The notes below the pieces were generated by a model. That model was not told the DNA's origin and did no database searches. It saw only the letters and a list, made by a program, of their open reading frames with translations. The translations under genes and the position numbers were made by a program. Shown here piece by piece: positions 4,363 to 52,473 of a stretch of 64,000 bases of DNA (the first letter of the stretch is position 1; each line of letters starts with the position of its first letter). The stretch lies in IMG/VR virus record IMGVR_UViG_3300042317_001568, positions 1 to 64,000 of that record. One strand, 5' to 3'.

Positions 4363-4367
4363 TAATA

Positions 4368-4396
4368 GCTAAATTGCTGTTAAATACAGGGCATAT
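4368..4396 (+). promoter_or_regulatory. Bipartite phage promoter-like motif, copy 1
   Basis: GCTAAAT-N15-GGCATAT, intergenic. Confidence 0.7.
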
Positions 4397-4458
4397 TCAT
4401 TGGCCCCCGCAGTAGCGTATTGCGGGTTTTCGCCACCGCGTATTGGGAGGAAACTACT

Positions 4459-4638
4459 ATGTCCCCGCGGAGAATCATTGGTGAATGCGCGTTAGTGGTC
4501 GGCGTGCTCGGCGGAACGGTTGTCGGCTTTTTAGCCGGCAGTCATTTCGTCGAACCGCAGATACAACTCGTGTTCGCTTTTATCGGCATGGCTCTTGGTG
4601 GAGCTTTTGTCGATATATGCTTAAGAGGAGGACAGTGA
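4459..4638 (+). CDS. Small two-TM membrane protein
   Basis: GGAGG RBS; two hydrophobic helices. Confidence 0.7.
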   Translation: MSPRRIIGECALVVGVLGGTVVGFLAGSHFVEPQIQLVFAFIGMALGGAFVDICLRGGQ

Positions 4639-5270
4639 TGTTTGCAAAGCTGTTGTTGATTGTCGTGTGCCTGACTGCCGTAGCTCACGGACAGAACCAG
4701 CCCACGCAGAAGGATATCGACCAGATGCGTGATTCGCTGGTCGCAAACTTCGACGCCCAGTCTCGCGAGGACGTCGATGCGATGATTGCGACGATCAGTC
4801 CGAAGGGTCAGCAGATGGCTGGCCCCACCGAGATGGCCGAGCTTCGGGAAGAATCCTTGAAACTCTTCGAGGAAACAAACCTGAAGCTACGGTTGGTCAG
4901 CCTGCACGTGTACGACTACTCGCCACCCAGCGTCAGCGGCTGCGCGTACGCCGACGTCGTGCAGCTCACGCTGCCGTCGGAGCATTCGTACGCGGACTTG
5001 GAGGAGTACCCGGCCGACATGAGCTCGCTCTGGCGGCACCACTCGGGGGCCTTGCCCACATCGCAGCTGGTGAAGTATGTTCTTCGGTTCGACTACGACC
5101 CGAAGGACCGCACGTGGAAACCGACGCGGATCGTGGAGCCGCCGAAGCCCGTGAGCAACTGGCCTGAGAACACTCAGGAAGTGATGCACGGCAAAGTGGC
5201 GGACCCGACAAGTCGGACCGGGGTGTGTTCAAACGGCAGATGTTCGAACAGGCTTACCAACAACCGGTAA
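4638..5270 (+). CDS. Secreted protein, possible NTF2/SnoaL-like fold
   Basis: GAGGAG RBS, signal peptide MFAKLLLIVVCLTAVAHG, then a helix-helix-beta pattern. Confidence 0.7.
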   Translation: MFAKLLLIVVCLTAVAHGQNQPTQKDIDQMRDSLVANFDAQSREDVDAMIATISPKGQQMAGPTEMAELREESLKLFEETNLKLRLVSLHVYDYSPPSVSGCAYADVVQLTLPSEHSYADLEEYPADMSSLWRHHSGALPTSQLVKYVLRFDYDPKDRTWKPTRIVEPPKPVSNWPENTQEVMHGKVADPTSRTGVCSNGRCSNRLTNNR

Positions 5271-5530
5271 GCGGTCGACTGGGCGACCTAAAATAGGACT
5301 TAAGCCTAGTGCGTGGGGAGCGCTAATCCGCTCCCCGATGTCTGCGTTCATAGTCGTTCATGATTGGCTGTGGCGTGGGTTATTGACACTCCTCGGCCTG
5401 CGTATGCCAACAGCCCTGCAAGGCTGCAAAAATACGTAGGCAGGCACGCCTGTGGTTGCAGCCGCAGTTTGGAAAGTCGCGCGCGTTATCGGGTTTCTCG
5501 GTGACGAAGTGTGGCGGCAGTGTCAGTCTC
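5271..5530 (+). ncRNA. Candidate structured RNA or leader upstream of tRNA-Lys
   Basis: No ORF. Hairpins 5315-5336 and 5396-5441, plus long-range pair TTGACACT(5383)/AGTGTCAG(5519). Confidence 0.4.
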
Positions 5531-5604
5531 GCCCCTTTAGCTCAGTTGGTTAGAGCATCGGACTTTTAATCCGTTGGTCCTAGGTTCGAATCCTAGAAGG
5601 GGCA
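5531..5604 (+). tRNA. tRNA-Lys(UUU)
   Basis: Cloverleaf; acceptor GCCCCTT/AAGGGGC, anticodon loop CT-TTT-AA, GGTTCGAATCC. No encoded CCA. Confidence 0.95.
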
Positions 5605-5642
5605 ATGGTTCAGTTGTTTTTTCACATCAAGGAGGGCGTGAA

Positions 5643-5852
5643 ATGAACTGGTTAATTATGTTGCTGATGTCGATCGTTGTGCCGGTCGTCCAGCCTGTCG
5701 TTCAGCAAGGAGTGCAGAACGTTCAGGTCCGCGTTGCGCAACGCATGCAACAACAGGCGGTCAAGCCCGTACAGCCCGCGGTCGTTTTTCATAACGGTCA
5801 GTGGTGGAAGTACGAGCAGGGCCAATGGTGGGTGTGGCAGGAACGCAGATGA
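5643..5852 (+). CDS. Small Gln/Val/Trp-rich exported protein
   Basis: GGAGGG RBS; hydrophobic N-terminus; GQWW repeats. Confidence 0.7.
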   Translation: MNWLIMLLMSIVVPVVQPVVQQGVQNVQVRVAQRMQQQAVKPVQPAVVFHNGQWWKYEQGQWWVWQERR

Positions 5853-6133
5853 CGAACTTTGAGTATCCGGTGGAAGAGTGGTTCACCGGACAGTACGCAG
5901 ACATCCCAATCCATATGCAGGAGACGATCAAACGGTACGTGATTGAAAAAGTCAGGCCGGGTGATTTTCTTTCTGCTATCATCACGAACGATCTCCGCGG
6001 CGCCGTTAACTACGCGGACGCCGACAACCTAGCCCGGATCAAGTTGTATGTGCAGTGGTTTTACAACCGCGCGCCAGCAATTTGCTCGGGTAGCAAGGAA
6101 GCGATGACCAACTGGCTTTCGGGTAACGCGTAA
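5849..6133 (+). CDS. Hypothetical phage protein
   Basis: ATGA overlap with the previous gene; PGDFLSAIITNDL segment. Confidence 0.75.
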   Translation: MTNFEYPVEEWFTGQYADIPIHMQETIKRYVIEKVRPGDFLSAIITNDLRGAVNYADADNLARIKLYVQWFYNRAPAICSGSKEAMTNWLSGNA

Positions 6134-6140
6134 ACCCGTC

Positions 6141-6225
6141 GGGGTTGTGGCGAAATGGCAGACGCAGCGGACTTAAAATCCGCTGGGAAGTAATTCCCGT
6201 GTGGGTTCGAGTCCCACCTCCCCCA
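6141..6225 (+). tRNA. tRNA-Leu(UAA), long variable arm
   Basis: GCGGA-CT-TAA-AA-TCCGC, variable arm GGGAA/TTCCC. The acceptor stem has two mismatches. Confidence 0.85.
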
Positions 6226-6343
6226 ATGATGATGACGATACACCGAAGTCGCCGGTCTTGTGTTCTGCAGTTTACTTCCTGACCTGCGGAACACGAGCGT
6301 ACGTTGCGCTCGCCGGCGATTTCTTTTTTCTATTGGAGCTCCC

Positions 6344-6598
6344 ATGAACAAGTGTCCGGAATGCAATGCCAGCCTCGACGGCGGCGGGATTTTTGAGACC
6401 TTGCGACCACAAGACTGGTGCGCACACATGGACGACGACGAATTGCGCAAATATGTGGAAGACCACTACGGCGCCGTCGATGCGCGATTCAGCCGGGTTA
6501 TTGGTGTCGAGTACCGCGGGCGTTACGACGGTGTGTGGGAATGGCGTTGCCCTGACTGTGCGGCAACGTGGCCTAGATTCGCGGAAGGGAAACGATGA
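6344..6598 (+). CDS. Hypothetical Zn-binding protein
   Basis: CPEC...CPDC; GGAG RBS. Confidence 0.75.
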   Translation: MNKCPECNASLDGGGIFETLRPQDWCAHMDDDELRKYVEDHYGAVDARFSRVIGVEYRGRYDGVWEWRCPDCAATWPRFAEGKR

Positions 6599-6894
6599 GT
6601 TTTTTACACCAGAAATACGCGTTTCGAGAAGGGTGCTGTACGACCACGCTGGTCGACGCAGAAACTACGCGCAACACGCTGCGTGTTGATGGCCCGTGTT
6701 TTTACTGCAAAGAGCCGCAATCTGTCACGGTTCCGGCGGAAGCGCTTATTCGGTTTGGGCAGGGCGATTTCGCTCAAAACTGTTTTCCAAACCTAACCCC
6801 GGGACAGCGCGAGTTCTTGATATCCGGGATTTGTGACCCGTGCTGGGATCAGATGTTTGGAGCCGATGAAGAAGATGAGGAACCTGACGCCTAG
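6595..6894 (+). CDS. Hypothetical Zn-binding phage protein
   Basis: CFYC...REFLISGICDPCW; ATGA overlap. Confidence 0.75.
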   Translation: MSFLHQKYAFREGCCTTTLVDAETTRNTLRVDGPCFYCKEPQSVTVPAEALIRFGQGDFAQNCFPNLTPGQREFLISGICDPCWDQMFGADEEDEEPDA

Positions 6895-6903
6895 GAGATC
6901 GAC

Positions 6904-7281
6904 ATGGCAGAGGAAGAAACAGTTGATCGGTTTGGATGGCGCAATTCCCACAAAGACTCGCCTGCAATGGGGCAGGAAGTCTACTATTTCGGTCCCAACA
7001 TAGGGATCGGAATCGGTCGGTACTCATACGAGGAAAACCGGTCATTTCGGCCGTATTCTTACGATGAAGCCGGCGTAAAAGTATATGACGACAAAGAGGT
7101 CGGGCTTTGTCCGCACATATTTACCAACAATAAATGGGGCGTGGTGGACGCGTGCGACGCCCCGCGATGGCAACCGTATGACCCAGAACGCGCCAAAAGC
7201 TGGTCGCCTATGCCGCCAGTCGGATATATCCGTCAAATCGTGCACGATCTCGACGCAATAACATATGTCGACGAGAAGTAA
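6904..7281 (+). CDS. Hypothetical protein
   Basis: GGAGA RBS; operon context. Confidence 0.7.
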   Translation: MAEEETVDRFGWRNSHKDSPAMGQEVYYFGPNIGIGIGRYSYEENRSFRPYSYDEAGVKVYDDKEVGLCPHIFTNNKWGVVDACDAPRWQPYDPERAKSWSPMPPVGYIRQIVHDLDAITYVDEK

Positions 7282-7299
7282 CAACAGAAAGAAGGTAAG

Positions 7300-7494
7300 A
7301 TGCCAGAAAATGTTTTTCTTTTTCAGCTGTTAACAGCGGCTGAAAAAAATATGCGCGAGGCTCTGGAGCCTTTGCAGAGTTTCGAGGCCGATGCTAAACA
7401 AAAAGATTCGCCGGCTGCGGTTCGTGGAAGGATCGCAGCAGACGCGATACGCGCGGCGTTGTTCGCGTTGCAGACAGTCAAGGCGGGAGCATGA
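7300..7494 (+). CDS. Hypothetical protein
   Basis: GAAGG RBS; helical sequence. Confidence 0.65.
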   Translation: MPENVFLFQLLTAAEKNMREALEPLQSFEADAKQKDSPAAVRGRIAADAIRAALFALQTVKAGA

Positions 7495-7498
7495 ACAA

Positions 7499-7572
7499 AG
7501 CCGCATAGCTCAATTGGTCAGAGCACCTCGTTTACACCGAGGGGGTTGGGGGTTCGAGTCCCTCTGCGGCTA
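7499..7572 (+). tRNA. tRNA-Val(UAC)
   Basis: Acceptor AGCCGCA/TGCGGCT; CCTCG-TT-TAC-AC-CGAGG; TTCGAGT loop. Confidence 0.95.
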
Positions 7573-7639
7573 TTAAACCCGGTGTGGGGCGCATCACGTG
7601 TTTTCAGGCACACCACTGAAAACAATCATGGAGGATTCT

Positions 7640-8017
7640 ATGGTCCGCAGTTTGCTGTGTCTGTTTTTGGTGGTGTCTGCCTTCACGGTCGAAGCAGCGC
7701 CACGGCGTCGTAGTTACACCTACACAACCCCGAGCACGTCATCGATGCCGCGCGTGTCAAGCTACACGTCAAGCTCGATGCCGGTTCATTCCAGTGGCGG
7801 CACTTCTTCCGCTCAGGGCGTTGCCGAGATGATGGCGTCTCGGGGCGTCATGCAGCATTTCGGAGGCAACTCCGGATATGAAGGGGTCGGCACCGGATCG
7901 ACGCCGGAACAGGCACTCGGCAATTGCTGCTATTCCAATAGCGGCATGGCTGTTGTTGATCAGGGCGTAGCCTGCGGCCGCAACGGCCGCTGGTACGCCT
8001 GCAAGCGTTACCGCTAG
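7640..8017 (+). CDS. Secreted protein with a minimal CAP/SCP-like domain
   Basis: GGAGG RBS, signal peptide, Ser-rich linker, then AQGVAEMMA...H-x-GG...EGVG...CCY...GRWYAC. Confidence 0.75.
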   Translation: MVRSLLCLFLVVSAFTVEAAPRRRSYTYTTPSTSSMPRVSSYTSSSMPVHSSGGTSSAQGVAEMMASRGVMQHFGGNSGYEGVGTGSTPEQALGNCCYSNSGMAVVDQGVACGRNGRWYACKRYR

Positions 8018-8067
8018 GCCCACTGGCGGGCGCTGGAGGAAGCCCAAGCCTCTGGCGCCCGCCTCAC

Positions 8068-8143
8068 GGGGCGTAAGGTAAGCCGGTTGCATCCAGCACT
8101 CTTATAAGGTGCCCATAGGTAGGTTCGACTCCTACACGCCCTA
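8068..8143 (+). tRNA. tRNA-Ile(UAU), atypical D-arm
   Basis: Acceptor GGGGCGT/ACGCCCT; GCACT-CT-TAT-AA-GGTGC; GTAGG-TTCGACT-CCTAC. Confidence 0.8.
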
Positions 8144-8162
8144 CTCACACTCGGAGACTGCG

Positions 8163-8588
8163 ATGAGTGACGTTCTAGTCGACATTCAGGAAGAGTACGG
8201 CTACCAGCATTGGTGGCTGCTCTGCACAGAAAAAGAATTTGCAGATATTTGCCGGCGCTGGCAGACTATGAAAAACCTATGCTGTTTGGTGCCGGTAGAC
8301 CTCGTGTTTCCCGGCGCCCGTGGACAGTTTAATCAATGGCCGCCGGAGGCCGCCTGCAAATCACGGGTAGAAAATGCCCGCGTAGTCCGCGCGCATGTAC
8401 ATCAGCACGACGATTCGTGGCTGGATGGCGTCACGTACAACATACCGGTCAGCGCCGACGAAAATGACGACTCTTTCGAGATTGACGGCGTGGTGTACAC
8501 TGGCGAGCAAATCATAGCGTTGCTCGCCGAGTCGCGCGCCAAGCGCACGGCAGACTATTTCGCGCTTCATCCGGAGGACGCGGGGTGA
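8163..8588 (+). CDS. Hypothetical protein
   Basis: GGAGA RBS; continuous ORF. Confidence 0.7.
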   Translation: MSDVLVDIQEEYGYQHWWLLCTEKEFADICRRWQTMKNLCCLVPVDLVFPGARGQFNQWPPEAACKSRVENARVVRAHVHQHDDSWLDGVTYNIPVSADENDDSFEIDGVVYTGEQIIALLAESRAKRTADYFALHPEDAG

Positions 8589-8863
8589 AACTCTTGCTTT
8601 GCCCGGAATGTTCTGACATATTCAACCTGCAAGCACACGTTAAAATGTGCAGCTGCGGGCAAACGCGTGGTCAGTACATTGACAATATAAATGCTGTCTA
8701 CTCTGGGGGTATACCTCTGGGGTTCGCTAACACCACGTTTCTTGAGGCGGTTGCAAATCAGCCTCAAGCTGGTGACGGCAAAACGTTTACTGCGTTTGTG
8801 ATTCCTGTTATGTGTCCCACTTTCAAGGAGCTACCCGATGGCCTTTCGAAGAGTGAACGCTGA
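8585..8863 (+). CDS. Hypothetical Zn-binding phage protein
   Basis: CPEC...CSCG; GTGA overlap. Confidence 0.75.
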   Translation: MKLLLCPECSDIFNLQAHVKMCSCGQTRGQYIDNINAVYSGGIPLGFANTTFLEAVANQPQAGDGKTFTAFVIPVMCPTFKELPDGLSKSER

Positions 8864-9005
8864 GCAGTATGTCGAGCTGTGTAACTTCTGCATGGAGAAT
8901 GACATCGCCTACGAGCTAAAAACGCTCGACAAGACGACGTTGCTCTTCGGGCTCGACCGACGATTCTGGCATGCGATTGACTACGGAGCGCTCGCGTGCG
9001 TGTAG
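8838..9005 (+). CDS. Small hypothetical protein (55 aa, not in the ORF track)
   Basis: AAGGAG RBS; MAFRRVNAEQYVELC...; ends just before tRNA-Glu. Confidence 0.55.
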   Translation: MAFRRVNAEQYVELCNFCMENDIAYELKTLDKTTLLFGLDRRFWHAIDYGALACV

Positions 9006-9008
9006 TTA

Positions 9009-9081
9009 GGCCCCATCGTCTAGAGGCCTAGGACACCACCCTTTCACGGTGGATACTGGGGTTCGAATCCCCATGGGGTCA
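9009..9081 (+). tRNA. tRNA-Glu(UUC)
   Basis: Acceptor GGCCCCA/TGGGGTC; CCACC-CT-TTC-AC-GGTGG. Confidence 0.95.
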
Positions 9082-9115
9082 GTGGTTCGATTTTCTTTAA
9101 CAACAAAGGTTTCCC

Positions 9116-9274
9116 GTGAAAAGCCAGTATTTTTTCATCGCTGCCGCAGGGCTGAGTTTTGTCTTCAGTGTTAGTCTCTGGTTTGCCGGAGAGACTGATT
9201 TGAATCGGCAGCAGGCCCTTTTCGTAGGGCTGTGGGTGCCTAGTATCTTGGGTCTGGGGACACTCTTAAAGTGA
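9116..9274 (+). CDS. Small two-TM membrane protein (52 aa, not in the track)
   Basis: MKSQYFFIAAAGLSFVFSVSLWF...LFVGLWVPSILGLG. Confidence 0.65.
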   Translation: MKSQYFFIAAAGLSFVFSVSLWFAGETDLNRQQALFVGLWVPSILGLGTLLK

Positions 9275-9372
9275 CTAACTTCACGATTTTCATCGTCGGA
9301 ATTATCGTGACACTGATAACAGGAATGGGCGTTCTGCTCAGTCTTGTGTCCATTGGGTACAAAAAAAAGTAA
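9271..9372 (+). CDS. Small single-TM peptide (33 aa, not in the track)
   Basis: GTGA overlap; MTNFTIFIVGIIVTLITGMGVLLSLVSIGYKKK. Confidence 0.6.
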   Translation: MTNFTIFIVGIIVTLITGMGVLLSLVSIGYKKK

Positions 9373-9386
9373 GTATCTTCTGGCGT

Positions 9387-9460
9387 GACTCGGTAGCCCA
9401 ACTGGCAGAGGCGCAGGATTTAGGTTCCTGTTGTTGTGGGTTCGACTCCCACCCGGGTCA
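9387..9460 (+). tRNA. tRNA with UAG anticodon (Leu), short variable loop
   Basis: Acceptor GACTCGG/CCGGGTC; CAGGA-TT-TAG-GT-TCCTG; 5-nt variable loop; A73. Confidence 0.85.
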
Positions 9461-9486
9461 TTGGTCTTTTTCTATAGGAGCGCATT

Positions 9487-9798
9487 ATGCGTATTTGGCT
9501 CGATGACGTTCGGCCCATGCCGGCTGAGTGGGACGTATGGCTCAGGACAGCCGAACAAGCTATTCTGGCTATCAAGCTTGGCGGCGTGACGGCTATTTCA
9601 CTGGACCACGATCTCGGCGACGAGTCTGCTAAGACCGGCTACGACGTGGCGAAGTTCATCGAAGAAGGAGCCTTTAAGGATACAATAGCTCCCATAGAAA
9701 TCTACGTCCACACCGCAAACGCGGCGGGCAGACAAAACATCATCCGTTCGATTCGCAAAGCCGAGAAGTTTTGGCATGAGCGACTCACGCGGACTTGA
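9487..9798 (+). CDS. Cyclic-phosphate-processing receiver-like domain protein
   Basis: IWLDDVR...ISLDHDLGD...TGYDVAK...VHTAN signature. Confidence 0.85.
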   Translation: MRIWLDDVRPMPAEWDVWLRTAEQAILAIKLGGVTAISLDHDLGDESAKTGYDVAKFIEEGAFKDTIAPIEIYVHTANAAGRQNIIRSIRKAEKFWHERLTRT

Positions 9799-9921
9799 CG
9801 ATTCGCTTCGGCAAAAACGGTGCTCTGATAGTTGGTAGAGCTTAATTGCGTTCAGCCCTAGTCGGTGTGTTTTCCTCCTTTCTTAACACCGGCCAAAAAA
9901 TGCAGCCGTTTTCTCTTACTC

Positions 9922-10268
9922 GGGGGCGTACTGGTATCGACAGGATAAAGAAGGTAAAGACTGCGTGTCGTGGTTGATCGGGTGGCCACGTTAAAACTCG
10001 ATTATGTTTCTAGCTGGCGCACATGCACCGGCCCTCGCTGCCTGACCTAGGTTAGGTGGTGAGTGGGGCGTCCTGAGCCCCATCGCCCAATCAGGATGAC
10101 GCCGATAATCGGCTGATCTGGCCCAGCAAGAAAGGGCAAGATGGTGGTAGCCCACCTGACGCCGATAATCGGCTAACTTTGGCAGTAGTGTAAACAACAA
10201 CTGCCTACACACGTAGACGTTTTTACTAGGCATATCTCTGGACGCGGGTTCGACTCCCGCCGCCTCCA
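9922..10268 (+). ncRNA. ssrA: tmRNA
   Basis: 5' GGGGGCGTACTGGTATCGAC; 3' GGACGCGGGTTCGACTCCCGCCGCCTCCA; internal reading frame ending ALAA-TGA (10043-10045). Confidence 0.93.
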
Positions 10269-10271
10269 CTG

Positions 10272-10332
10272 CACTACCGCGCTTTGACTGCATGGGTAAA
10301 ACCCTAAGTCAAAGCGCGGTAGTGTTTTTTTT
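10272..10332 (+). terminator. Intrinsic terminator with an 18-bp perfect stem
   Basis: CACTACCGCGCTTTGACT / AGTCAAAGCGCGGTAGTG followed by T8. Confidence 0.85.
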
Positions 10333-10337
10333 GTACT

Positions 10338-10367
10338 CCCATCGGCAACGTGCCGGTGGGTTTTTTT
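10338..10367 (+). terminator. Second tandem intrinsic terminator
   Basis: CCCATCGGCA-ACG-TGCCGGTGGG followed by T7. Confidence 0.75.
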
Positions 10368-10404
10368 GTTGATTATCTTTCCCCAGCAGAAGGAGTTGCT
10401 GCAA

Positions 10405-11628: not shown

Positions 11629-11837
11629 TTATGCGTCATTTAGAGGCAATGATTCTGCAAGAGCGCGGCGACAACCGAAATCTGCTCGCGGAAATCAAAG
11701 AAAAGCTGTCTCCTGAGTCGCAGGAACGGCTTTTCCGCCTTTTCCAAGACCATGAGCACGAGATTGGCCGCCTGAAAAGGAAAGCCAGCATGACTTCGGC
11801 AGCAATCGCGAGTCATCTGGCTGGTTTTGGACGCTGA
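11625..11837 (+). CDS. Hypothetical protein
   Basis: GGAGG RBS; GTGA overlap. Confidence 0.65.
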   Translation: MIMRHLEAMILQERGDNRNLLAEIKEKLSPESQERLFRLFQDHEHEIGRLKRKASMTSAAIASHLAGFGR

Positions 11838-11843
11838 AAAGCA

Positions 11844-11942
11844 GTGTTTTGACGTAACTCCTTATCGCGCAGTAGTTTACGACCGCTGGCATATGCTATT
11901 TGTCGTAAATGTCTGTGCGGTAAGGAGTTACGCAAAATACAC
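11844..11942 (+). repeat. About 40-bp imperfect inverted repeat (long hairpin)
   Basis: Arms 11844-11883 and 11902-11942; several mismatches are G-U on the + strand. Confidence 0.85.
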
Positions 11943-12012
11943 CAAACGCAACGATCCGTTTTTTTAGCTAATAGCGCCCCTGTATACTCATTTGTTTACA
12001 CAGGAGGGCGCT

Positions 12013-12084
12013 ATGGATACCTGCAGCTTCGATTTTGAGGACATTATGTCCTTCCTGTTCGACGACGACTGGGACGCCGAATAG
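12013..12084 (+). CDS. Putative 23-aa acidic peptide
   Basis: GGAGGG RBS; MDTCSFDFEDIMSFLFDDDWDAE. Confidence 0.45.
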   Translation: MDTCSFDFEDIMSFLFDDDWDAE

Positions 12085-12109
12085 CCCTAAATACCCCCTA
12101 TGGCGAATA

Positions 12110-12138
12110 GCTAAATATAGGCCAAAAACAGGGTATAT
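12110..12138 (+). promoter_or_regulatory. Bipartite promoter-like motif, copy 2
   Basis: GCTAAAT-N15-GGTATAT. Confidence 0.7.
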
Positions 12139-12140
12139 GA

Positions 12141-13142
12141 ATTGACGGGGATAATAGGTATTGCCTATAGACCCGTCCCGGAACCCGCTACGGTGAAAGT
12201 GGGACCAGACCTGCAGCAGCAGTGTTCTGGGCTTAATACTGCGGGGAAGCGCCGCAGGGCTGATGATCGGCCGCCACAATCCGTCGGGTCCGTTGCAGTG
12301 GACCAGTGAGACGTTAAAACAGAATCTCGACTGCGCGGCCTAATACGCCGTAACGTTCTGGCTGTAAAGTCAGATCGTTATCCGCACCGCTACAGGTGTG
12401 GGTGAGCCGGCCCTTCTCGATGGGGTCTGGTTTCCCGATGGGGGTGTGCACTCATTAGAGCACCTCCATTAAGACGTTGTGGCGCCTCTTCTGCGCGACC
12501 AACGTACGGCCTGTGTCAATATAAGTCGTACCCAAGGTACGCTTTTGAAACAGGGTTTGCTGCTAATTCCTCCAGCGCAGCACACGGTTTTCGCAAGCCG
12601 TCCAATCGGGAGTCGATTCAGTGTAGGGAGACAAAGTAGCCATGGCGAAATGTTTCCAGCAGTGTTGACAGGGCGTAACGCACCCTGTGTGTGACACACT
12701 GCGATCTACAGCTGCAATCGGCTGCGAACCCATCTTCGGTTCGTGAGTGGAGGACAATACACGCTAGCCGCAAGGCTGGCACGTCGTTTCTTCCGACGTA
12801 GCGGAAGAGGTTTGACCAACAAGCCTAACTGTTGGTGATCGTATGTGGGTTAAACCACAAACGTTCGCGAGCCGCTCAGTCGCCAAAGTTCCAAGAGCCC
12901 TTAGTTGCGTTACGGAAGTGAAACGCAACGGCTAGCCGTGTAGCAGGAACGTGTATTAAGACACGTACACGGCACAATAAACGCCTACCACCGGGCGATA
13001 TGGCGTGGCTGCCGCACGAGGGAAGTAACGTGCGTGGGGACCGGCACCTAGCCGGGGCTGTGGACGCACAGTTGACGCTTAAATGGAAGACGCGGCGAGG
13101 TGCACCTCAAAGCGAGCCGGGTTCGATTCCCGGCATAGTGTC
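12141..13142 (+). ncRNA. Candidate giant structured ncRNA 1 (about 1 kb)
   Basis: No credible ORF; many hairpins and long-range helices; T-arm-like 3' end; promoter motif directly upstream. Boundaries are approximate. Confidence 0.65.
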
Positions 13143-13228
13143 TAGTTTTTTGGCAAGGTACCGTTCCCTGCCACCCCATCTGAGGGCTTTTGAACGGACG
13201 CGTGTCTCGAAAGAGAAAGGGGAGTGCT

Positions 13229-14101
13229 ATGAGCACTTTCAAGTCAGTTGTCGCCAGCCCGTTTTACGGGTTCGGCTGGGTCGCTGGTCAGATCAAGAAC
13301 GGCTACGACAAGGCGGTGAACGCCACGTCGTCGGCCGCGTCGCAGGTGGCCACCGCCGCCACCTCGACGGCCAAGGCCGCCAAGGCCAAGGCCACCAAGG
13401 CGGGCAAGGCCGTGAAGGGCGGCGCCAAGGCGGCCAAGGCTGCTACGGTTAAGGCCGGCAGCTCGGCCAAGGCGAAGGTTGCGTCCTTCGCCCGCCACGC
13501 CGCCGCCGATGCCCGCGGGCTCGGCGCCATGCTGTTCGGCATGGTCAAAGTGGCCGCCGTGGGCGTTGTCACGATTGCCACCGCGGTTCTCCTCGGTGTC
13601 GTCAAGACGGTGGGCTTGGTGGCCCACGCCGTGGGGCTGATTGCCCTCGGCGTGGCGGCGTTGGTGGTGACTAGCTTCTCGCTGGTTGCCATTGCAGCGT
13701 TCTGCGTGGCGTTTCTCGCAACGCTCGCCGTGGTGTTCATCGTCCGCGGAATCTTCACAGCGCTCGCGGCTGTGGGGCGGTTTCTGACCGGCGAAGGCGG
13801 CATGGTTATCGCGACCGTGTTGCACGACCTGTCGGTGTTCTGCTGCTTCCTTGCCGCCGTTTACGCCTGCGTTGCGGTGGCGGCGGTGGCCATTCCGGCG
13901 CTCGGGATTGCCGCCGCCAATGCTGCCGCCGTGGCGGTGATCGCCACGTGGTGTGCCCTGCTGGGCGCGGGAACGGGGATTGCCGGCCTTCTGCTGGAGG
14001 CCGCCAACCGCCTCCCGGAGGTTGTGGTGTATGCGCCGCCCAGTCGGCGTATCCTGCCTAACGACGTCTATCCGGGCGTCATCGGCACCGCGACTGCCTG
14101 A
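13229..14101 (+). CDS. Ala/Lys-rich multi-pass membrane protein
   Basis: GGGGAG RBS; AKA repeats followed by several hydrophobic helices. Confidence 0.8.
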   Translation: MSTFKSVVASPFYGFGWVAGQIKNGYDKAVNATSSAASQVATAATSTAKAAKAKATKAGKAVKGGAKAAKAATVKAGSSAKAKVASFARHAAADARGLGAMLFGMVKVAAVGVVTIATAVLLGVVKTVGLVAHAVGLIALGVAALVVTSFSLVAIAAFCVAFLATLAVVFIVRGIFTALAAVGRFLTGEGGMVIATVLHDLSVFCCFLAAVYACVAVAAVAIPALGIAAANAAAVAVIATWCALLGAGTGIAGLLLEAANRLPEVVVYAPPSRRILPNDVYPGVIGTATA

Positions 14102-14179
14102 CTAAGGTCGGGTAGTAAACATTGACGCGCACACACGCGTGGAGGGCAGCAAGCCACCTCCTTACCAAAAAAGAATTGC

Positions 14180-14215
14180 ACGGGCCGGTCACGCCGACGC
14201 AGGCCCGTTTCTTTT
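14180..14215 (+). terminator. Probable intrinsic terminator
   Basis: ACGGGCC...GGCCCGT followed by a T-rich tail. Confidence 0.5.
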
Positions 14216-14259
14216 ATCTATTCCCAATCCCACATCCTTAAGAAAGGAACGCGTTAATT

Positions 14260-14886
14260 ATGGGAATTCTGGACACCAAGGCTGCCGTGGCGTGCACGGT
14301 TGCTCACGAGTCGATTCAGCAGATGCGGAAGTATGGCGACCGGCGCTATTACACGCACCCGCTGACGGTGGCCGCGCTCGTGCACACGCTGCCGGGCACG
14401 GACGAGGCGATGTTCGCTGCGGCGTGCCTCCATGACGTCATCGAAGACGTCTACCCGAAGAACCCCGCCTACGGCCCCGCGTGGGTTGCGAACAACTTCG
14501 GCGAGGAAGTGCTGCTGCTCGTTCATGAGCTCACCAACGAGTTCACGAAAGAGCGGTATCCCGACCTCAACCGCAACGAGCGGAAGCGGCGGGAGAGTCT
14601 GCGGCTCGCCGACATCTCCGACGCCGCGAAGGTTGTGAAGCAGGCAGACCTGTATCACAACAGCACGGAGATCAGCCCTGACACCCGCTTCTGGGGTCAA
14701 TGGTTGAAGGAGAAGAACGAGCTCGACGAGCTCATCGGCGCGTGGGAGGACCGCGAGTGCGGCTTCCTCACGGGTGGCGACGTCTGGAGTCTTGTCGGCT
14801 CTGGCGAGTTCAAGATGCTCGTCGCTACGGCGCACGAGATCGACGAGTTCTACAAGGTCGCCGACTGGGGCCTTGTGACTGCGTAA
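14260..14886 (+). CDS. HD-domain hydrolase, RelA/SpoT-HD (Mesh1/SAH-like)
   Basis: AH...Q-x-RK...Y-x-x-HP-x-x-VA...AA-x-LHDVIED...FG-x-EV-x-x-LV-x-ELT...VK-x-AD-x-x-HN. Confidence 0.85.
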   Translation: MGILDTKAAVACTVAHESIQQMRKYGDRRYYTHPLTVAALVHTLPGTDEAMFAAACLHDVIEDVYPKNPAYGPAWVANNFGEEVLLLVHELTNEFTKERYPDLNRNERKRRESLRLADISDAAKVVKQADLYHNSTEISPDTRFWGQWLKEKNELDELIGAWEDRECGFLTGGDVWSLVGSGEFKMLVATAHEIDEFYKVADWGLVTA

Positions 14887-14946
14887 ACAATTGGCGCGGC
14901 AGGGAGTCCTGCCCTCCCGCACCTTTTGTTTAGCTATTAGCGCGTA

Positions 14947-14975
14947 GCTAAATATACGACAAATAAACGGCATAT
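14947..14975 (+). promoter_or_regulatory. Bipartite promoter-like motif, copy 3
   Basis: GCTAAAT-N15-GGCATAT, preceded by TTTAGCTATTAGCGC. Confidence 0.7.
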
Positions 14976-15069
14976 CTAATGAGTACCGGGAATCATATTG
15001 CCACTGGTACTTGAGTTTTAAGCCGCACATCCGGCTAGCTCCACAAGGCAATTCTGAAGGAGCCCACAA

Positions 15070-15492
15070 ATGGCATCTATCTACACCGCCGTCCTCCTGA
15101 CCGAAGAGTCCCGCCAGAACCTGATCGCGTTCTACGGTCTCACGTCGTTCTACGCGGAGGGTTGGGTCATCAAGGCCCACCACATGACGATCGATACCAA
15201 GTCTGCGGATAAGGCCGGCGTCGCGGACTTGGTCGGCAAAGAGTTCACGATGGACGTGACCGCCGTCGGCAGGCTCATGGTGGACGACACCCGCGGCATC
15301 GTCGCCGTGACTGTCGAGACTGCGGCCCCGTCGAAAAACGCCATCAAGCACGTCACGGTGGCGCACGCGGATGGCGTCAAGCCTATGATGTCTAACAACA
15401 TCACCGACTGGCGGCCCGTCAAGCCGGGCACGCTCACGCTCACGGGCGTCGTGTGCATGCTTGAGTCGGCTCCCGTGCCGGCGAAGAGCTGA
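15070..15492 (+). CDS. 2H phosphoesterase (cyclic phosphodiesterase-like)
   Basis: Two H-x-T motifs (HHMTI, KHVTVA) with 2H spacing; AAGGAG RBS. Confidence 0.75.
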   Translation: MASIYTAVLLTEESRQNLIAFYGLTSFYAEGWVIKAHHMTIDTKSADKAGVADLVGKEFTMDVTAVGRLMVDDTRGIVAVTVETAAPSKNAIKHVTVAHADGVKPMMSNNITDWRPVKPGTLTLTGVVCMLESAPVPAKS

Positions 15493-15539
15493 ACACTCGC
15501 GGCGGCTTACAACGCCGCGCAGTAGGTCTGCATAGACCA

Positions 15540-15572
15540 GCCCCCAAACCGAAAGGTGCGGGGGCTTTTTTT
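15540..15572 (+). terminator. Intrinsic terminator
   Basis: GCCCCC..ACC-GAAA-GGT..GGGGGC followed by T7. Confidence 0.8.
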
Positions 15573-15586
15573 AGCTATCAGCGCGT

Positions 15587-15615
15587 GCTAAATATGGAAC
15601 AAATGCGCGGCATAT
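15587..15615 (+). promoter_or_regulatory. Bipartite promoter-like motif, copy 4
   Basis: GCTAAAT-N15-GGCATAT. Confidence 0.7.
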
Positions 15616-15805
15616 TGATTGTGCGCCAGTGATTTTTTGTTGGCGCGGGTTTGTTGACAACTGCAAAAGGACCTTGCGGTGTTTGAATTCTTTGACAACA
15701 TGTCGCTCAGCTCCTTGATGGCGTTCGCGTTAAGTACGTCATGGGTGCTTAGTTCTTTGTGTGAATTGTTCGAGGAGTAACGCTCTTTAAGAAGGGAGTC
15801 GTCCG

Positions 15806-16303
15806 GTGGATATTTTTCTAGACATAAAAAGGCAGCAAGAATACGCGAAACAGCTGGAAGACGGCGACAGGCGTAACGTGGAAGACTGGGCCCGCAACCA
15901 AGAGCGCCGTAATGAGGCAAAGCGCCGCGGCCTTTTTCAGCGCGATAAGCCCAAAGAGCGCCGCATTGCTATTTTTCAGCGCTGGCAAAAAATGCGTAAA
16001 GCGAGTGCCATCAAGCTGCGCGCCCCGGACGGCGACTCTAGGTTTTGTTTATGTAAATGCGGTCGGCCCAAGGCGTGCGCACAAACGCACTGCTACGACT
16101 GTCAGGACATGATGTTTATTGTCCGGCACAGGATACCAATGTCTGGCGCAGTAGAAGTCGAAAAGCGATATGGGCGAATATACGAAACGCCCCTGCTGCG
16201 CCACGACATCGACTACCGATCGTCTAGGTACGAGGACAGTGAGAACTTCGGTAGCCTCCACAATGTGATTCGGGCGATGGAAGACTCCCTAGCGTACGAT
16301 TAA
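15806..16303 (+). CDS. Hypothetical protein with a Cys cluster
   Basis: AAGGGAG RBS; CLCKC...CYDC. Confidence 0.65.
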   Translation: MDIFLDIKRQQEYAKQLEDGDRRNVEDWARNQERRNEAKRRGLFQRDKPKERRIAIFQRWQKMRKASAIKLRAPDGDSRFCLCKCGRPKACAQTHCYDCQDMMFIVRHRIPMSGAVEVEKRYGRIYETPLLRHDIDYRSSRYEDSENFGSLHNVIRAMEDSLAYD

Positions 16304-16305
16304 AC

Positions 16306-16387
16306 GCTAAATAGTCTCCAAAAGCCTGACATATACAGAAAATGCGGGTTTCTGCTGAGCTAAATATTCAGCAAAAACACGGCATAT
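16306..16387 (+). promoter_or_regulatory. Tandem bipartite promoter-like motifs, copies 5 and 6
   Basis: GCTAAAT-N15-GACATAT (16306-16334) and GCTAAAT-N15-GGCATAT (16359-16387). Confidence 0.7.
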
Positions 16388-16391
16388 CTAG

Positions 16392-17070
16392 TGCTCAGCG
16401 CGCTAGCTGTCGACGGCTACGCGCTAATTGACGTGAATTCGTTCTGAGCCTGCGCGGTGTACCATTGCTTGAACGGATGCTTCCGTGGTGATTCGAGCAG
16501 TGAGTAAAAGCTGCGCAGGCTTTTCCGTAAATACGTCCGCGGCAGGCAGTTAAGCCGCGTAGAAAACTGCCAATACACTCGACCTTCGCCTTGCGAGAAT
16601 GCGGCGAACAGAATCTGCCGTCACGGGCACCATCTTTGGTGGCTCGAAAGTTGGGCGATCATCGGCCCAAAGGCGGGATAGGACGCACACTATCCGCGCT
16701 ACGCGATTTGTAAATCCCAAAGTGGAAGGAGGAAATGTCGAATTCCCAAAGCAAGGAATTCCGTAGCAGGCTGTGTAAGACTGCGCAAAAAGCATTTCCA
16801 AGCGCCCCGGACCGCTAGCTCAAACACAACGACGCTAGAAGAGGGTTCGGTACCGGATGGGCCGGTCGTGATTCATAGCATAAACCTGCGTTTGTTACTT
16901 TGGTCGGCCAACCAAATAATAAACAAAGGCGCTACTGCAGTCGGTCGTACAACTGACTGTAGAGTAATCGCGTGACTGATGAGGATAGCAAACACGTAGT
17001 TGGGGAACTCGTAGCAGGTTAGCGTCTGCTGCGATGCTTCTTCCCAAAGGTGGTGCCCGTGACGGCAGTT
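16392..17070 (+). ncRNA. Candidate large structured ncRNA 2 (about 680 nt)
   Basis: No credible ORF; 25-bp long-range stem 16615-16639/17044-17068; many nested hairpins; tandem promoter motifs upstream. Confidence 0.65.
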
Positions 17071-17103
17071 GTTAGTTTAACCCCTAAGAAAGGATGGACT
17101 CTC

Positions 17104-17319
17104 ATGTTGTTTATTGGAATGCTCGGTGCGGTGTTCGTGCTCGGTGCGGTTGCTGGGACCATCAGCGACATGGTCAATACCGAAAAGCCTAAAATGGCCA
17201 CCACGTTTACTCGTGTTTCGACCAAGGTCACGAGCGGTATCGTCGACGTGGACCCGAATGGCAACATCATCAGGATCACCGACGCCTCCGGGCGCGTGGT
17301 CTATGAGGAGGGGGCTTAA
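17104..17319 (+). CDS. Small membrane-anchored protein
   Basis: AAGGA RBS; N-terminal TM segment. Confidence 0.7.
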   Translation: MLFIGMLGAVFVLGAVAGTISDMVNTEKPKMATTFTRVSTKVTSGIVDVDPNGNIIRITDASGRVVYEEGA

Positions 17320-17347
17320 CGCCCTTTCTTTTAGCTATCAGCGCCCA

Positions 17348-17376
17348 CCTAAATTAAACACAAAAGCCCGTCATAT
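17348..17376 (+). promoter_or_regulatory. Bipartite promoter-like motif, copy 7
   Basis: CCTAAAT-N15-GTCATAT after a terminator and TTTAGCTATCAGCGC. Confidence 0.6.
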
Positions 17377-17886: not shown

Positions 17887-17892
17887 TTTTTC

Positions 17893-52466: not shown

Positions 52467-52473
52467 GTGCCGT

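What the first reader, a model, noticed from the sequence alone, without database searches (positions are those of the whole stretch)
4368..17376. Seven copies of a fixed-spacing promoter-like motif confined to the accessory region
Seen: SCTAAAT-N15-GNYATAT starts at 4368, 12110, 14947, 15587, 16306, 16359 and 17348. The spacer is always 15 nt, with AAA at spacer positions 8-10 in all seven. All copies are intergenic, on the + strand, upstream of genes or of the two candidate ncRNAs. I saw none in the structural region. It is not the sigma70 consensus, though it loosely recalls sigma28-type TAAA spacing. Inference: an early promoter for the phage's own RNA polymerase (47-54 kb), as for virion RNAPs of phiKZ/AR9, or for a host alternative sigma.
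Basis: partly seen in the sequence, partly recalled or inferred. Interest (0 to 1): 0.8.

Follow-up and report, generated by a model that had tools for sequence, protein, structure and literature searches.

The report
Phage-specific bipartite promoter, sigma-28-like geometry
Seven copies of a rigid two-box DNA signal in the variable region of a 205 kb lake-water phage are almost certainly promoters, probably read by the phage's own bacterial-type RNA polymerase and sigma factor, though no start site was mapped.

Summary
Seven exact matches lie on the + strand, with none expected by chance and no weaker copies elsewhere in the window.

The real element is about 37 nt: aGCTAAATA-N5-CAAAw-N-Ccg-GkCATAT-yt-A-n-TGa. 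It recurs more than 90 times in a family of roughly 200 kb freshwater phages.
- The box spacing is always the same.
- 90 of 92 sites lie outside called genes.
- 76 of 81 are co-oriented with the next gene, typically about 56 nt before its start codon.
- Many sit directly after a terminator.
- Most are followed within a few bases by an RNA stem-loop that keeps pairing through compensatory and G-U changes.

This is promoter anatomy. The geometry matches sigma-70-family promoters (hexamers 17 bp apart, G at -14). CTAAA and ATA superimpose exactly on the sigma-28 fliC promoter, but the sigma-28 core CGA is absent.

The phage encodes a fused beta-beta' polymerase. About 27 kb beyond the window it also encodes a sigma-70-family factor orthologous to the virion-packaged sigma of Salmonella phage Arash.

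Who reads the motif, and when, is inferred. No transcription start could be mapped. The kind of element is known; this example is new.

The parts
4367..4403 (+). Promoter site 1 (37.4 bits). It begins 5 nt after the stop of the glycosyltransferase gene (3247-4362). It lies upstream of ORF 4485-5270, the Pistol ribozyme, six tRNAs and the tmRNA.
12109..12145 (+). Promoter site 2 (44.7 bits). It lies upstream of a region without a good ORF (12.14-13.19 kb) that is held as RNA in one metatranscriptome, followed by ORFs 13190-14101 and 14260-14886 (HD domain).
14946..14982 (+). Promoter site 3 (44.3 bits). It is preceded by a terminator-like hairpin and T-run (about 14896-14931) and by the junction TTTAGCTATTAGCGCG. 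It lies upstream of ORF 15070-15492.
15586..15622 (+). Promoter site 4 (35.1 bits). It is preceded by a terminator-like hairpin and T-run (about 15539-15572). It lies upstream of ORF 15806-16303.
16305..16341 (+). Promoter site 5, the weakest (25.8 bits). It lacks the A-n-TG block and lies 53 nt upstream of site 6. It is either a tandem or a decaying copy.
16358..16394 (+). Promoter site 6 (44.7 bits). It lies upstream of a highly structured RNA of about 450 nt (16615-17070).
17347..17383 (+). Promoter site 7 (40.0 bits). It is preceded by a terminator-like hairpin and T-run (about 17305-17332). It lies upstream of the DUF6321 gene (17693-19048), which starts the block conserved among relatives.
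4401..4435 (+). 5' leader stem-loop starting at the conserved TG of site 1. Equivalent stem-loops lie at about 12144-12177, 14981-15012, 15620-15647, 16397-16425 and 17394-17413.
   Evidence: family-wide; covariation in a homologous group
47108..51511 (+). Fused RNA polymerase beta plus the N-terminal part of beta' (1467 aa). This is the candidate enzyme that reads the motif. No motif copy lies upstream of it.
52474..54384 (+). RNA polymerase beta' C-terminal part (636 aa).
21200..23146 (+). SNF2-type ATPase, homologous to Arash gp217, which is abundant in Arash virions. It is one of the few proteins shared with Arash, together with the RNAP, a homologue of the structural protein gp218, and sigma.

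Best explanation
The motif is a class of strong bipartite promoters used by one family of roughly 200 kb freshwater phages.

In sigma-70-family register:
- CTAAAT is the -35 hexamer.
- YATATY is the -10 hexamer, 17 bp later. The invariant A24 sits at the -11 position (the base that is flipped out in sigma-70-family open complexes) and the invariant G21 at -14, the extended -10 position.
- The conserved T-G-(A) marks the start region.

Transcription would begin 6-8 nt after the ATAT box, at window 4402-4404, 12144-12146, 14981-14983, 15621-15623, 16393-16395 and 17382-17384. The RNA folds at once into a 5' stem-loop.

The most likely reader is the phage's own sigma-70-family factor. It is encoded about 27 kb beyond the window, among genes for very large proteins, the same neighbourhood as its Arash orthologue gp10. 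It would work with the phage's fused beta-beta' polymerase.

By analogy with Arash, that holoenzyme would arrive in the virion. It would fire about nine promoters per genome, which drive a hypervariable set of ORFans, tRNAs, a tmRNA and structured RNAs.

Shown: the element, its conservation, its promoter-like placement, and the sense-strand RNA hairpin directly downstream.
Inferred: the start site, the identity of the sigma and core enzyme, virion delivery, and early timing.

I put about 0.9 on 'sigma-type promoter' and about 0.55 on 'read by the phage's own sigma and polymerase'.
For: Statistics in the window: 7 matches against 0 expected, all on one strand, with a clean bimodal matrix score.

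Family-wide evidence:
- There are 92 unique sites of at least 30 bits in IMG/VR contigs of about 190-205 kb.
- 90 of 92 lie outside called genes. The next gene is on the same strand in 76 of 81 cases, and the commonest distance to its start codon is 56 nt.
- The spacer is 15 nt in 126 of 133 box pairs. The other seven are scattered matches at other spacings, and the seven examples printed all lie in AT-rich contigs without other family-type sites.
- Positions not demanded by the search patterns are conserved: A30 in 80/91, T32 in 90/91, G33 in 88/91.

Local anatomy:
- Terminator hairpins with T-runs directly precede 3 of the 7 window sites. A T-run lies just upstream of 26 of the 91 family sites (hairpins not checked there).
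- A stem-loop starts 0-4 nt after T32 in 73 of 91 sites.
- In 14 homologous sites, 97.6% of cells pair, 4 of 7 pairs change on both sides, and G-U pairs occur on the sense strand only. The structure therefore forms in sense RNA that starts no more than 8-9 nt after the box.

Geometry: the register is identical to the sigma-28 fliC promoter, with CTAAA at -35..-31 and A-T-A at -11..-9 (PMC12784957).

Phage machinery:
- RNAP domains are present.
- The sigma has region 3 at 40 bits (cut-off 25.3) and region 4 at 24.3 bits (cut-off 24.1).
- A profile of the sigma family matches SigA regions 2-4 at 2e-10.
- The sigma is orthologous to Arash gp10 at 6e-18. Arash gp10 was detected in virions with 100% coverage.
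- The sigma's region 4.2 helix-turn-helix is nearly invariant across homologues that are only about 65% identical overall, paralleling the invariant -35 box.

Other points:
- Neither the RNAP nor the sigma gene has the motif upstream.
- Sigma-70-type promoter matches are not enriched in the region (9 found against 7.7 expected).
- The strict pattern found only 3 stretches in one genome each of 185,579 species. One of the three is a phage fragment.
Against: - No 5' end was mapped. The only RNA evidence is four metatranscriptome assemblies that hold RNAs downstream of two sites (12204-12745, and 16641 to about 17058). Their ends lie 60 and about 250 nt from the predicted starts, so they are processed or incompletely assembled.
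- Related sites were collected with patterns that fix the boxes and the spacer. Conservation of the boxes in relatives is therefore partly circular.
- The sigma is not specifically FliA-like by sequence. FliA scores only 5e-4, against 2e-10 for SigA.
- Arash, which has the orthologous sigma, lacks this motif. It uses GGTATAAG-N5-TGTAA without a -35 box.
- A genuine copy (43.6 bits) sits in 62% G+C DNA of a Planctomycetaceae MAG, within a run of helicase and PLD-nuclease genes next to an integrase. This could mean that a host holoenzyme reads the motif.
- The conserved mid-spacer A-tract and the strict intolerance of a spacer one base longer or shorter are unusual for sigma-70-type promoters.
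Confidence: 0.55

Rival explanations
1. The motif is a promoter read by the host's RNA polymerase with a host sigma factor. That sigma could be a sigma-28/FliA-like or other alternative sigma, or an unusual housekeeping sigma of an unstudied phylum. The phage polymerase would then serve other gene classes. A variant of this rival is the phage sigma redirecting the host core enzyme.
For: - The -35 core and box spacing are identical to sigma-28 promoters.
- The hexamers sit at the canonical 17-bp spacing.
- One full-quality copy lies in host-like DNA (62% G+C) of a Planctomycetaceae MAG, placed correctly about 48 nt before an ORF.
- The RNAP and sigma genes carry no motif themselves. Something else must express them, unless they are delivered in the virion.
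Against: - The sigma-28 -10 core C-G-A is replaced by k-C-A. That CGA is critical for sigma-28 is from my own knowledge of the mutational literature.
- The -35 box bears no resemblance to TTGACA.
- The strict pattern is essentially absent from 185,579 species' genomes. This test is insensitive for a looser host regulon.
- The phage carries a complete sigma plus polymerase, and the orthologues are packaged in Arash virions.
- Consensus-level identity over about 37 nt, across phages whose cassette genes are unrelated, is typical of phage-specific recognition.
Confidence: 0.27
2. The motif is an operator for a dimeric DNA-binding regulator rather than a promoter. The outer halves are inverted repeats (CTAAATAT ... 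ATATyTAG).
For: - There is partial dyad symmetry over 8 positions. One site just outside the window also scores 14.7 bits on the opposite strand.
- The spacing is rigid.
- An inverted copy of the -35 half (TTTAGCTATCAGCGC) lies 18 nt upstream in 27 of 91 sites.
Against: - The element is strongly asymmetric: A-2/G-1, C12-A16, C18-G21 and T32-G33-A34 have no mirror partners.
- Within every fetched stretch that holds several sites, they all lie on one strand, and across the family the next gene downstream is on the site's strand in 76 of 81 cases.
- The right half is only half-conserved at the mirrored positions.
- An operator does not explain the fixed distance to a sense-strand RNA hairpin.
Confidence: 0.05
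3. The repeats matter mainly as recombination substrates. They would be composite terminator-promoter cassette borders, like the PeSLs of T4-type phages, that shuffle accessory genes. Promoter activity would be secondary. This reading does not exclude the promoter reading.
For: - About 30% of sites share a fixed junction: T-run, then the TTAGCTA core of AGCTATCAGCGC, 17-19 nt before the -35 box. In the three window examples the T-run follows a terminator hairpin.
- The genes between the window's sites (10.5-17.5 kb) have almost no protein-level match in the relatives' motif-bearing loci. The block from 17.5 kb onwards is conserved in 14-18 loci.
- PeSLs are documented in PMC2839356 and PMC4122927.
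Against: - No recombination junction was demonstrated here.
- Only partial stretches of the relatives were available.
- Conservation is concentrated in the functional boxes, not spread evenly over the repeat.
Confidence: 0.08
4. The motif acts at the RNA or single-stranded DNA level. It could be a processing site, or a hairpin promoter of the phage N4 type.
For: The outer halves could pair as an 8-bp A/U stem.
Against: - The potential pairs show no compensation. Position 24 is always A while position 7 is A or T, and position 28 is C in about 4 of 10 sites (16/35; 34/91) opposite the invariant A3.
- Many sites lie after terminators, and so outside upstream transcripts.
- No single-subunit N4-type polymerase turned up among the called proteins I scanned. 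The second scan's summary was complete; the first showed 25 of its 27 families.
Confidence: 0.02

Closest known systems
Sigma-28 (FliA/SigD) flagellar promoters: TAAA-N15-GCCGATAA, for example P. aeruginosa fliC with (-36)TCTAAAG(-30) and (-15)GCCGATAA(-8)
   Same: CTAAA sits at -35..-31 and A-T-A at -11..-9 with identical spacing. There is a long -10 region with a G at -15/-14. (PMC12784957)
   Different: - The -13/-12 bases are G/T-C instead of C-G, so the CGA core is missing.
- T replaces A at -8.
- There is a conserved mid-spacer A-tract, a conserved T-G start block and an obligatory 5' stem-loop.
- The phage sigma is not closer to FliA than to SigA or RpoS.
Phage-encoded sigma factors that redirect transcription to phage-specific promoters (SPO1 gp28, T4 gp55; from my own knowledge)
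   Same: A phage sigma-70-family protein and a phage-specific consensus placed in front of a temporal or functional gene class.
   Different: Those sigmas use the host core enzyme and are made during infection. Here the phage also has its own beta-beta', and the orthologous sigma is found in virions.
Early promoters of the virion multisubunit RNAPs of phiKZ and AR9 (reviewed in PMC7598289)
   Same: A phage-encoded multisubunit polymerase and a highly uniform phage-specific promoter in front of non-structural genes.
   Different: The phiKZ/AR9 enzymes are split into several polypeptides, have no sigma-70-family subunit and use short single-box AT-rich motifs near the start. Here there is a fused beta-beta', a true sigma, and a two-box promoter with a -35 element.
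The promoter-like motif GGTATAAG-N5-TGTAA of Salmonella phage Arash, the nearest cultured relative (about 32% RNAP identity).
   Same: A G-G-Y-A-T-A-W core upstream of non-structural genes and tRNAs. In both phages the TG lies a few bases downstream (4 nt here, 6 in Arash). The sigma and RNAP are orthologous.
   Different: Arash has no conserved -35 box, and its sigma gp10 has no detectable region 4. The spacing from box to TG differs by 2 nt. The window's matrix finds nothing in 92 kb of Arash.
PeSLs, the composite promoter-early/stem-loop motifs of T4-type phages (PMC2839356, PMC4122927)
   Same: Conserved terminator-plus-promoter modules flank variable ORFan cassettes in a hyperplastic region.
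   Different: PeSL promoters are host sigma-70 early promoters. A recombination role was not tested here.

Membership tests
Sigma-70-family bipartite promoter | Two conserved boxes at a fixed distance compatible with -35/-10 (hexamers 17 +/- 1 bp apart) | tested here: met
Sigma-70-family bipartite promoter | Intergenic, upstream of and co-oriented with transcription units | tested here: met
   90 of 92 sites lie outside called genes. The next gene is on the same strand in 76 of 81 cases, at a modal distance of 56 nt. All 7 window sites are on the + strand, like nearly all genes.
Sigma-70-family bipartite promoter | Transcription starts about 7 nt downstream of the -10 hexamer | tested here: inconclusive
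   No 5' ends could be mapped. RNA contigs begin 60-250 nt downstream. Indirect support comes from a covarying sense-strand RNA hairpin with G-U pairs that begins 8-9 nt after the box.
Sigma-70-family bipartite promoter | Initiation depends on a sigma-70-family factor | not testable with these tools
   A candidate sigma exists (L026:18252-19055), but its binding or activity cannot be computed.
Sigma-28 (FliA) promoter class | TAAA at about -34..-31, with 15 nt before the 8-mer -10 region | tested here: met
   The register is identical to the fliC promoter described in PMC12784957.
Sigma-28 (FliA) promoter class | -10 region GCCGATAA with the CGA core | tested here: not met
   The consensus is g-G-k-C-A-T-A-T. 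C-13 and G-12 are replaced in every site. The motif is therefore not filed as a sigma-28 promoter.
Housekeeping sigma-70 promoter | TTGACA-like -35 and TATAAT -10 with T at -7 | tested here: not met
   The -35 box is CTAAAT, and position -7 is T in only about half of the sites. The sigma-70 consensus scan is not enriched in the region.
phiKZ/AR9 virion-RNAP early promoters | Split multisubunit RNAP without a sigma-70-family factor; single short AT-rich box at the start site | tested here: not met
   The polymerase is a fused beta-beta' with a separate beta' C-terminal part. A sigma-70-family factor is present. The motif is two-box.
N4-type hairpin promoters | A DNA hairpin upstream of the start, read by a single-subunit virion RNAP | tested here: not met
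   There is no compensation between the potentially pairing halves. No single-subunit RNAP turned up among the called proteins scanned.
PeSL-like composite promoter-terminator cassette borders | Stem-loop terminator joined to a conserved early promoter, flanking variable genes, with cassette exchange at the repeats | tested here: inconclusive
   The terminator-plus-junction-plus-promoter composite is present at 3 of 7 window sites. 27 of 91 family sites carry the junction, and 26 of 91 a T-run. The cassettes are unrelated between relatives. Exchange points were not mapped.
Sigma-70-family sigma factor (the candidate reader, L026:18252-19055) | Regions 2, 3 and 4 in order | tested here: met
   Pfam region 3 scores 40.3 bits (cut-off 25.3) and region 4 scores 24.3 bits (cut-off 24.1). 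The family profile aligns to SigA regions 2-4 at E = 2e-10. Region 2 on its own is weak.

The most novel reading that the evidence does not exclude
A bacterial-type holoenzyme (fused beta-beta' plus a sigma-70-family factor) is carried in the virion. It starts infection from about nine sigma-28-geometry promoters. The single perfect copy of the promoter in an integrase-bearing Planctomycetaceae island, next to helicase and PLD-nuclease genes, is a trap: the island's small genes would be switched on only when this phage's polymerase enters the cell. That would make the island an infection sensor or satellite keyed to a phage-specific promoter, and it would also name the host phylum.
Probability: 0.12. 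Interest if true: 0.85.

Novelty: new member of a known kind. Interest (0 to 1): 0.55.

Why it matters
The window belongs to a large, uncultured family of roughly 200 kb lake phages. The sigma search alone returned 369 proteins at E ≤ 0.001.

These phages carry a near-complete bacterial-type transcription apparatus. A clean 37-nt consensus gives that apparatus a defined template. With recombinant beta-beta' and sigma, promoter recognition could be reconstituted without culturing the host.

It would test three questions:
- whether a sigma-containing holoenzyme can be delivered in a virion;
- how a sigma keeps the sigma-28 geometry while changing -10 specificity;
- whether conserved terminator-promoter modules organise the hypervariable early region.

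The promoter is also a practical annotation tool. It marks transcription units, including two unannotated structured RNAs, in hundreds of metagenomic contigs.

Tried and rejected
- A near-identity search of 4-18 kb against GenBank phages found no match.
- A sigma factor inside the window was not found by Pfam scans of 66 called proteins (the first batch summary showed only 25 of its 27 families) or by tblastn with both Arash sigmas.
- The sigma was found only by walking along the JGI contig.
- The window's matrix finds nothing in 92 kb of Arash.
- A search for a second, -10-only promoter class in the window showed no clear enrichment.
- Start-site mapping from public RNA failed. The four metatranscriptome runs are kept as contigs and hold only stable RNAs and one gene stretch, with no informative ends.
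- GTAT in the leader loop is not a general element. It is positioned in only about a third of sites, mostly one homologous group.
- Looking for a hidden second sigma among the motif-driven ORFans gave nothing, from PDB, PHROGs or the protein atlas.
- The 'moraphage' and boreal jumbophage papers concern unrelated lineages.
- A test of covariation between sigma and promoter was not possible. All collected lineages share the same boxes, because the search patterns required them.
- Host identification yielded only weak hints: a Planctomycetaceae island and a 203 kb contig binned as Sphingorhabdus.

Full report
**Observation**

No matches occurred in 100 dinucleotide-preserving shuffles. Relaxing to two mismatches adds nothing.

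A 37-nt weight matrix built from 35 unique family sites scores the seven at 25.8-44.7 bits. Nothing else in the 64 kb exceeds 8 bits on the + strand or -4.3 on the - strand. The class is sharply bounded, with no tail of weaker sequences.

Site 16306 is the weakest and lacks the final block.

**What the window is**

The window is positions 1-64000 of IMG/VR contig 3300042317_001568 (205,010 bp). This equals 56,621-120,620 of a 205,038 bp JGI lake-water contig. DNA runs holding it are lake-water metagenomes. Nearly all genes are on the + strand.

Gene content:
- A fused RNA polymerase beta plus N-terminal beta' (47108-51511) and a C-terminal beta' (52474-54384).
- An SNF2 ATPase and RNA-repair domains.
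- Seven tRNAs, six of them in a 4 kb cluster with the tmRNA.
- A Pistol ribozyme.

The nearest cultured relatives are Salmonella phage Arash and Vibrio phages D69, D181 and D148, at about 31-32% identity over the polymerase. Only the polymerase parts, the SNF2 ATPase, one structural protein and a sigma factor are detectably shared with Arash.

**Distribution**

Two exact-pattern scans of IMG/VR returned the motif in many contigs of 190-205 kb. Several copies typically cluster within 5-15 kb, always on one strand within a locus.

In this phage's own genome the two scans find nine sites: the seven in the window, plus two at 66,693 and 67,465. Those two lie upstream of a 201-aa ORF and an AAA_5 ATPase. 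A contiguous 90.6 kb was also scanned with the matrix and gave the same nine. The remaining 114 kb was checked only by the two patterns, which together recover eight of the nine known sites.

A caveat applies. The relatives' sites were found with patterns that fix both boxes and the spacer, so conservation of those positions is partly circular. Independent support comes from three sources:
- positions that were not required by the patterns;
- extra matrix-only hits in the same loci;
- the context analyses below.

**Promoter anatomy**

Among 92 unique sites of at least 30 bits:
- 90 lie outside genes, using my own crude codon-usage caller.
- The next gene is on the same strand in 76 of 81 cases.
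- The distance from the T-G-A block to the start codon clusters at 50-95 nt, with a mode of 56.

The spacer is 15 nt in 126 of 133 box pairs found in all fetched DNA. The seven exceptions are scattered at other spacings. The seven examples printed all lie in AT-rich contigs without other family-type sites.

Three of the seven window sites are preceded by a G+C-rich hairpin and a T-run, and 26 of the 91 family sites have a T-run just upstream.

In 73 of 91 sites, the sequence after the conserved T-G folds into a stem-loop beginning within 0-4 nt. The mean z-score is -1.8 against mononucleotide shuffles.

For 14 homologous sites from different contigs:
- 97.6% of cells in this stem pair.
- Four of seven pairs change on both sides, and the observed covariation score was reached by 0 of 500 shuffles.
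- Several variants are G-U pairs. These would be C-A mismatches on the other strand.

The structure is therefore selected in sense-strand RNA. It begins 8-9 nt after the ATAT box. Because many sites follow terminators, the RNA has to start in the short gap between box and stem.

**Direct RNA evidence**

Direct RNA evidence is thin. Four metatranscriptome assemblies hold a highly abundant RNA at 16641/16646 to 16980/17058. One of them also holds 12204-12745 and 13633-14704. Both non-coding stretches lie downstream of motif sites, but their ends are 60 and about 250 nt from the predicted starts. The data are contigs, not reads.

**Geometry and known classes**

Counted as hexamers, CTAAAT and YATATY are 17 bp apart. 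This is the canonical sigma-70-family spacing. It places the invariant A24 at -11 and the invariant G21 at -14.

The P. aeruginosa sigma-28 open-complex paper gives fliC as (-36)TCTAAAG(-30) and (-15)GCCGATAA(-8), with A-11 flipped (PMC12784957). In that register the phage motif has:
- CTAAA at -35..-31;
- G at -15 in about two thirds of sites;
- A-T-A at -11..-9.

The superposition is exact. The sigma-28 core C-G at -13/-12 is replaced by (G/T)-C in every site, so I do not file it as a sigma-28 promoter. The -35 box is unlike TTGACA, and sigma-70 consensus matches are not enriched.

The conserved A-tract sits roughly one helical turn from each box, at -23..-19. The same paper notes that in the E. 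coli sigma-28 complex the beta' zinc-binding domain contacts the spacer. A similar contact here is speculation.

**The candidate reader**

No sigma is encoded in the window. Walking along the JGI contig found a 267-aa protein about 27 kb beyond the window. It lies after a run of very large proteins and two small ORFs before a gene with only a faint Baseplate_J hit.
- It has Sigma70 region 3 above the Pfam cut-off and region 4 at the cut-off.
- A profile of 19 homologues aligns to regions 2-4 of SigA and RpoS structures at 2e-10, and to FliA at only 5e-4.
- It is the orthologue of Arash gp10 (6e-18), with the same neighbourhood.

In Arash, gp10, the two polymerase parts and the SNF2 ATPase are all abundant in purified virions (PMC10585845).

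Across homologues only about 65% identical overall, the region 4.2 helix-turn-helix is almost invariant. This parallels the invariant -35 box.

Arash has its own promoter-like motif, GGTATAAG-N5-TGTAA. It occurs 23 times in 92 kb, 22 of them on the strand of the non-structural genes. It shares the G-G-Y-A-T-A-W core but has no -35 box, and Arash gp10 has no detectable region 4. With only two lineages, this correlation is suggestive and no more.

Neither the polymerase genes nor the sigma gene has the motif upstream. If they read the motif, they must either arrive in the virion or be expressed first from another promoter class.

**Evidence for the rival (a host sigma)**

A strict 20-base version of the motif occurs in only three stretches among one genome each of 185,579 species.
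- One is a fragment of a family phage.
- One looks like chance: 37% G+C, with no T-G block.
- One is a full-quality site (43.6 bits, with T-G-A and a following hairpin) in a Planctomycetaceae MAG.

The Planctomycetaceae site sits in 62% G+C DNA. It lies between a PLD-DUF3427 helicase gene and a set of small ORFs, which are followed by an HTH_17 gene and an integrase. Either the host's own polymerase reads such promoters, or a mobile island carries a promoter keyed to this phage. I cannot tell which. The absence of further genome hits is weak evidence, because a host regulon would rarely match 20 fixed bases.

**Genome dynamics**

About 30% of sites share a fixed junction: T-run, then the TTAGCTA core of AGCTATCAGCGC, 17-19 nt before the -35 box. 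In the three window examples the T-run follows a terminator hairpin. This junction is an inverted copy of the GCGCTGAT-AGCTAAA that directly precedes other sites.

The cassettes between the window's promoters (10.5-17.5 kb) have almost no protein-level match in the relatives' motif-bearing loci. The block from 17.5 kb onwards is conserved in 14-18 loci. This resembles the promoter-terminator composites (PeSLs) of T4-type phages (PMC2839356, PMC4122927). No exchange points were mapped.

**Verdict**

- The element is a sigma-type promoter class (about 0.9).
- 'Early' timing and virion delivery are inferences from Arash and from the gene content downstream: ORFans, tRNAs, a tmRNA, an HD-domain protein, a weak sub-threshold match to a tRNA-ligase phosphodiesterase domain, and structured RNAs.
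- I found no publication on this phage family or its promoters.
- It is a new example of a known kind of element.

Noticed in passing
window 16615-17070: A structured RNA of about 450 nt, closed by a 25-bp helix (16616-16640 pairs with 17046-17070).
- Folding z-score is -8.4.
- There is no Rfam match, even at E = 5.
- Four metatranscriptomes hold 16641/46-16980/17058 at up to about 170-fold word depth, while flanking genes are at zero.
- A variant contig changes GGATAG/CTATCC (16676-16695) to AAACGG/CCGTTT, which is four compensatory pairs.
   Followed up: partly
window 5273-5343: A Pistol self-cleaving ribozyme (58.1 bits, gathering score 34.5). It starts 3 nt after the stop of ORF 4485-5270 and lies ahead of the tRNA cluster. 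It may cut the mRNA away from the tRNA precursor.
   Followed up: no
window 5531-10271: Six tRNA genes (Lys, Leu, Val, Ile, Glu, Leu) and a one-piece tmRNA (9922-10271, 122.8 bits; predicted tag GAHAPALAA). A strong terminator follows at 10338-10360. All lie downstream of promoter site 1 with no strong terminator in between.
   Followed up: partly
window 12204-12745: One metatranscriptome holds a 551-nt contig, from a diverged relative, over the ORF-poor 60% G+C stretch downstream of promoter site 2. There is no Rfam match.
   Followed up: no
L114 6657-6693 = L115 9920-9956 (Planctomycetaceae MAG CANFQO010000019.1): A full-quality copy of the phage promoter (43.6 bits, with T-G-A and a leader hairpin, 48 nt before an ATG) in 62% G+C DNA.
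- Upstream lie UvrD, PLD, SNF2 and PLD-DUF3427 helicase genes.
- Downstream lie six small ORFs, an HTH_17 gene and an integrase at the contig end.
- It could be a host regulon member, or an island or satellite keyed to the phage polymerase.
- It is also a weak hint at the host.
   Followed up: partly
L020+L025 and L001 (Salmonella phage Arash, 92 kb examined): A promoter-like motif GGTATAAG-N5-TGTAA occurs 23 times. Of these, 22 are on the strand of the non-structural genes and tRNAs, about 20-30 nt before ribosome-binding sites. It has no conserved -35 box. The Arash paper contains no occurrence of the word 'promoter'.
   Followed up: partly
window 14928-14945, 15569-15585, 17329-17346, and 27 of 91 family sites: A fixed junction element, TTTAGCTAT(C/T)AGCGC, lies 17-19 nt upstream of the -35 box. 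It is the inverted copy of the GCGCTGAT-AGCTAAA that directly precedes 18 other sites. Its function is unknown. Possibilities are a second sigma region 4 or regulator site, or a recombination scar.
   Followed up: partly
L024 4926-4962 (about 2.7 kb right of the window): This promoter copy is nearly palindromic and also scores 14.7 bits on the opposite strand. The outer halves of the motif are in general inverted repeats (CTAAATAT / ATATyTAG).
   Followed up: partly
window 47108-54384: The polymerase is arranged as a beta-beta'(N-terminal) fusion, then a 243-aa and a 72-aa ORF of unknown function, then beta'(C-terminal). In Arash, ten genes separate the two parts. I found no alpha or omega homologue.
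   Followed up: no
window 37893-39311, 35508-36542 and others: 'Swiss Army Knife' RNA-repair domains (2H-SAK, HAD_SAK_2, cREC_REC), a PhoH-like protein, a ferritin-like protein, a trypsin-like protease, a matrixin, and a Volactin actin-like protein. The last is unusual cargo for a phage.
   Followed up: no
P0071 (sigma homologue): One sigma homologue (66% identity) is labelled Sphingorhabdus sp. in NCBI, on a 202,923 bp contig. This is probably a whole phage genome binned into a MAG. It conflicts with the Planctomycetaceae hint about the host.
   Followed up: no
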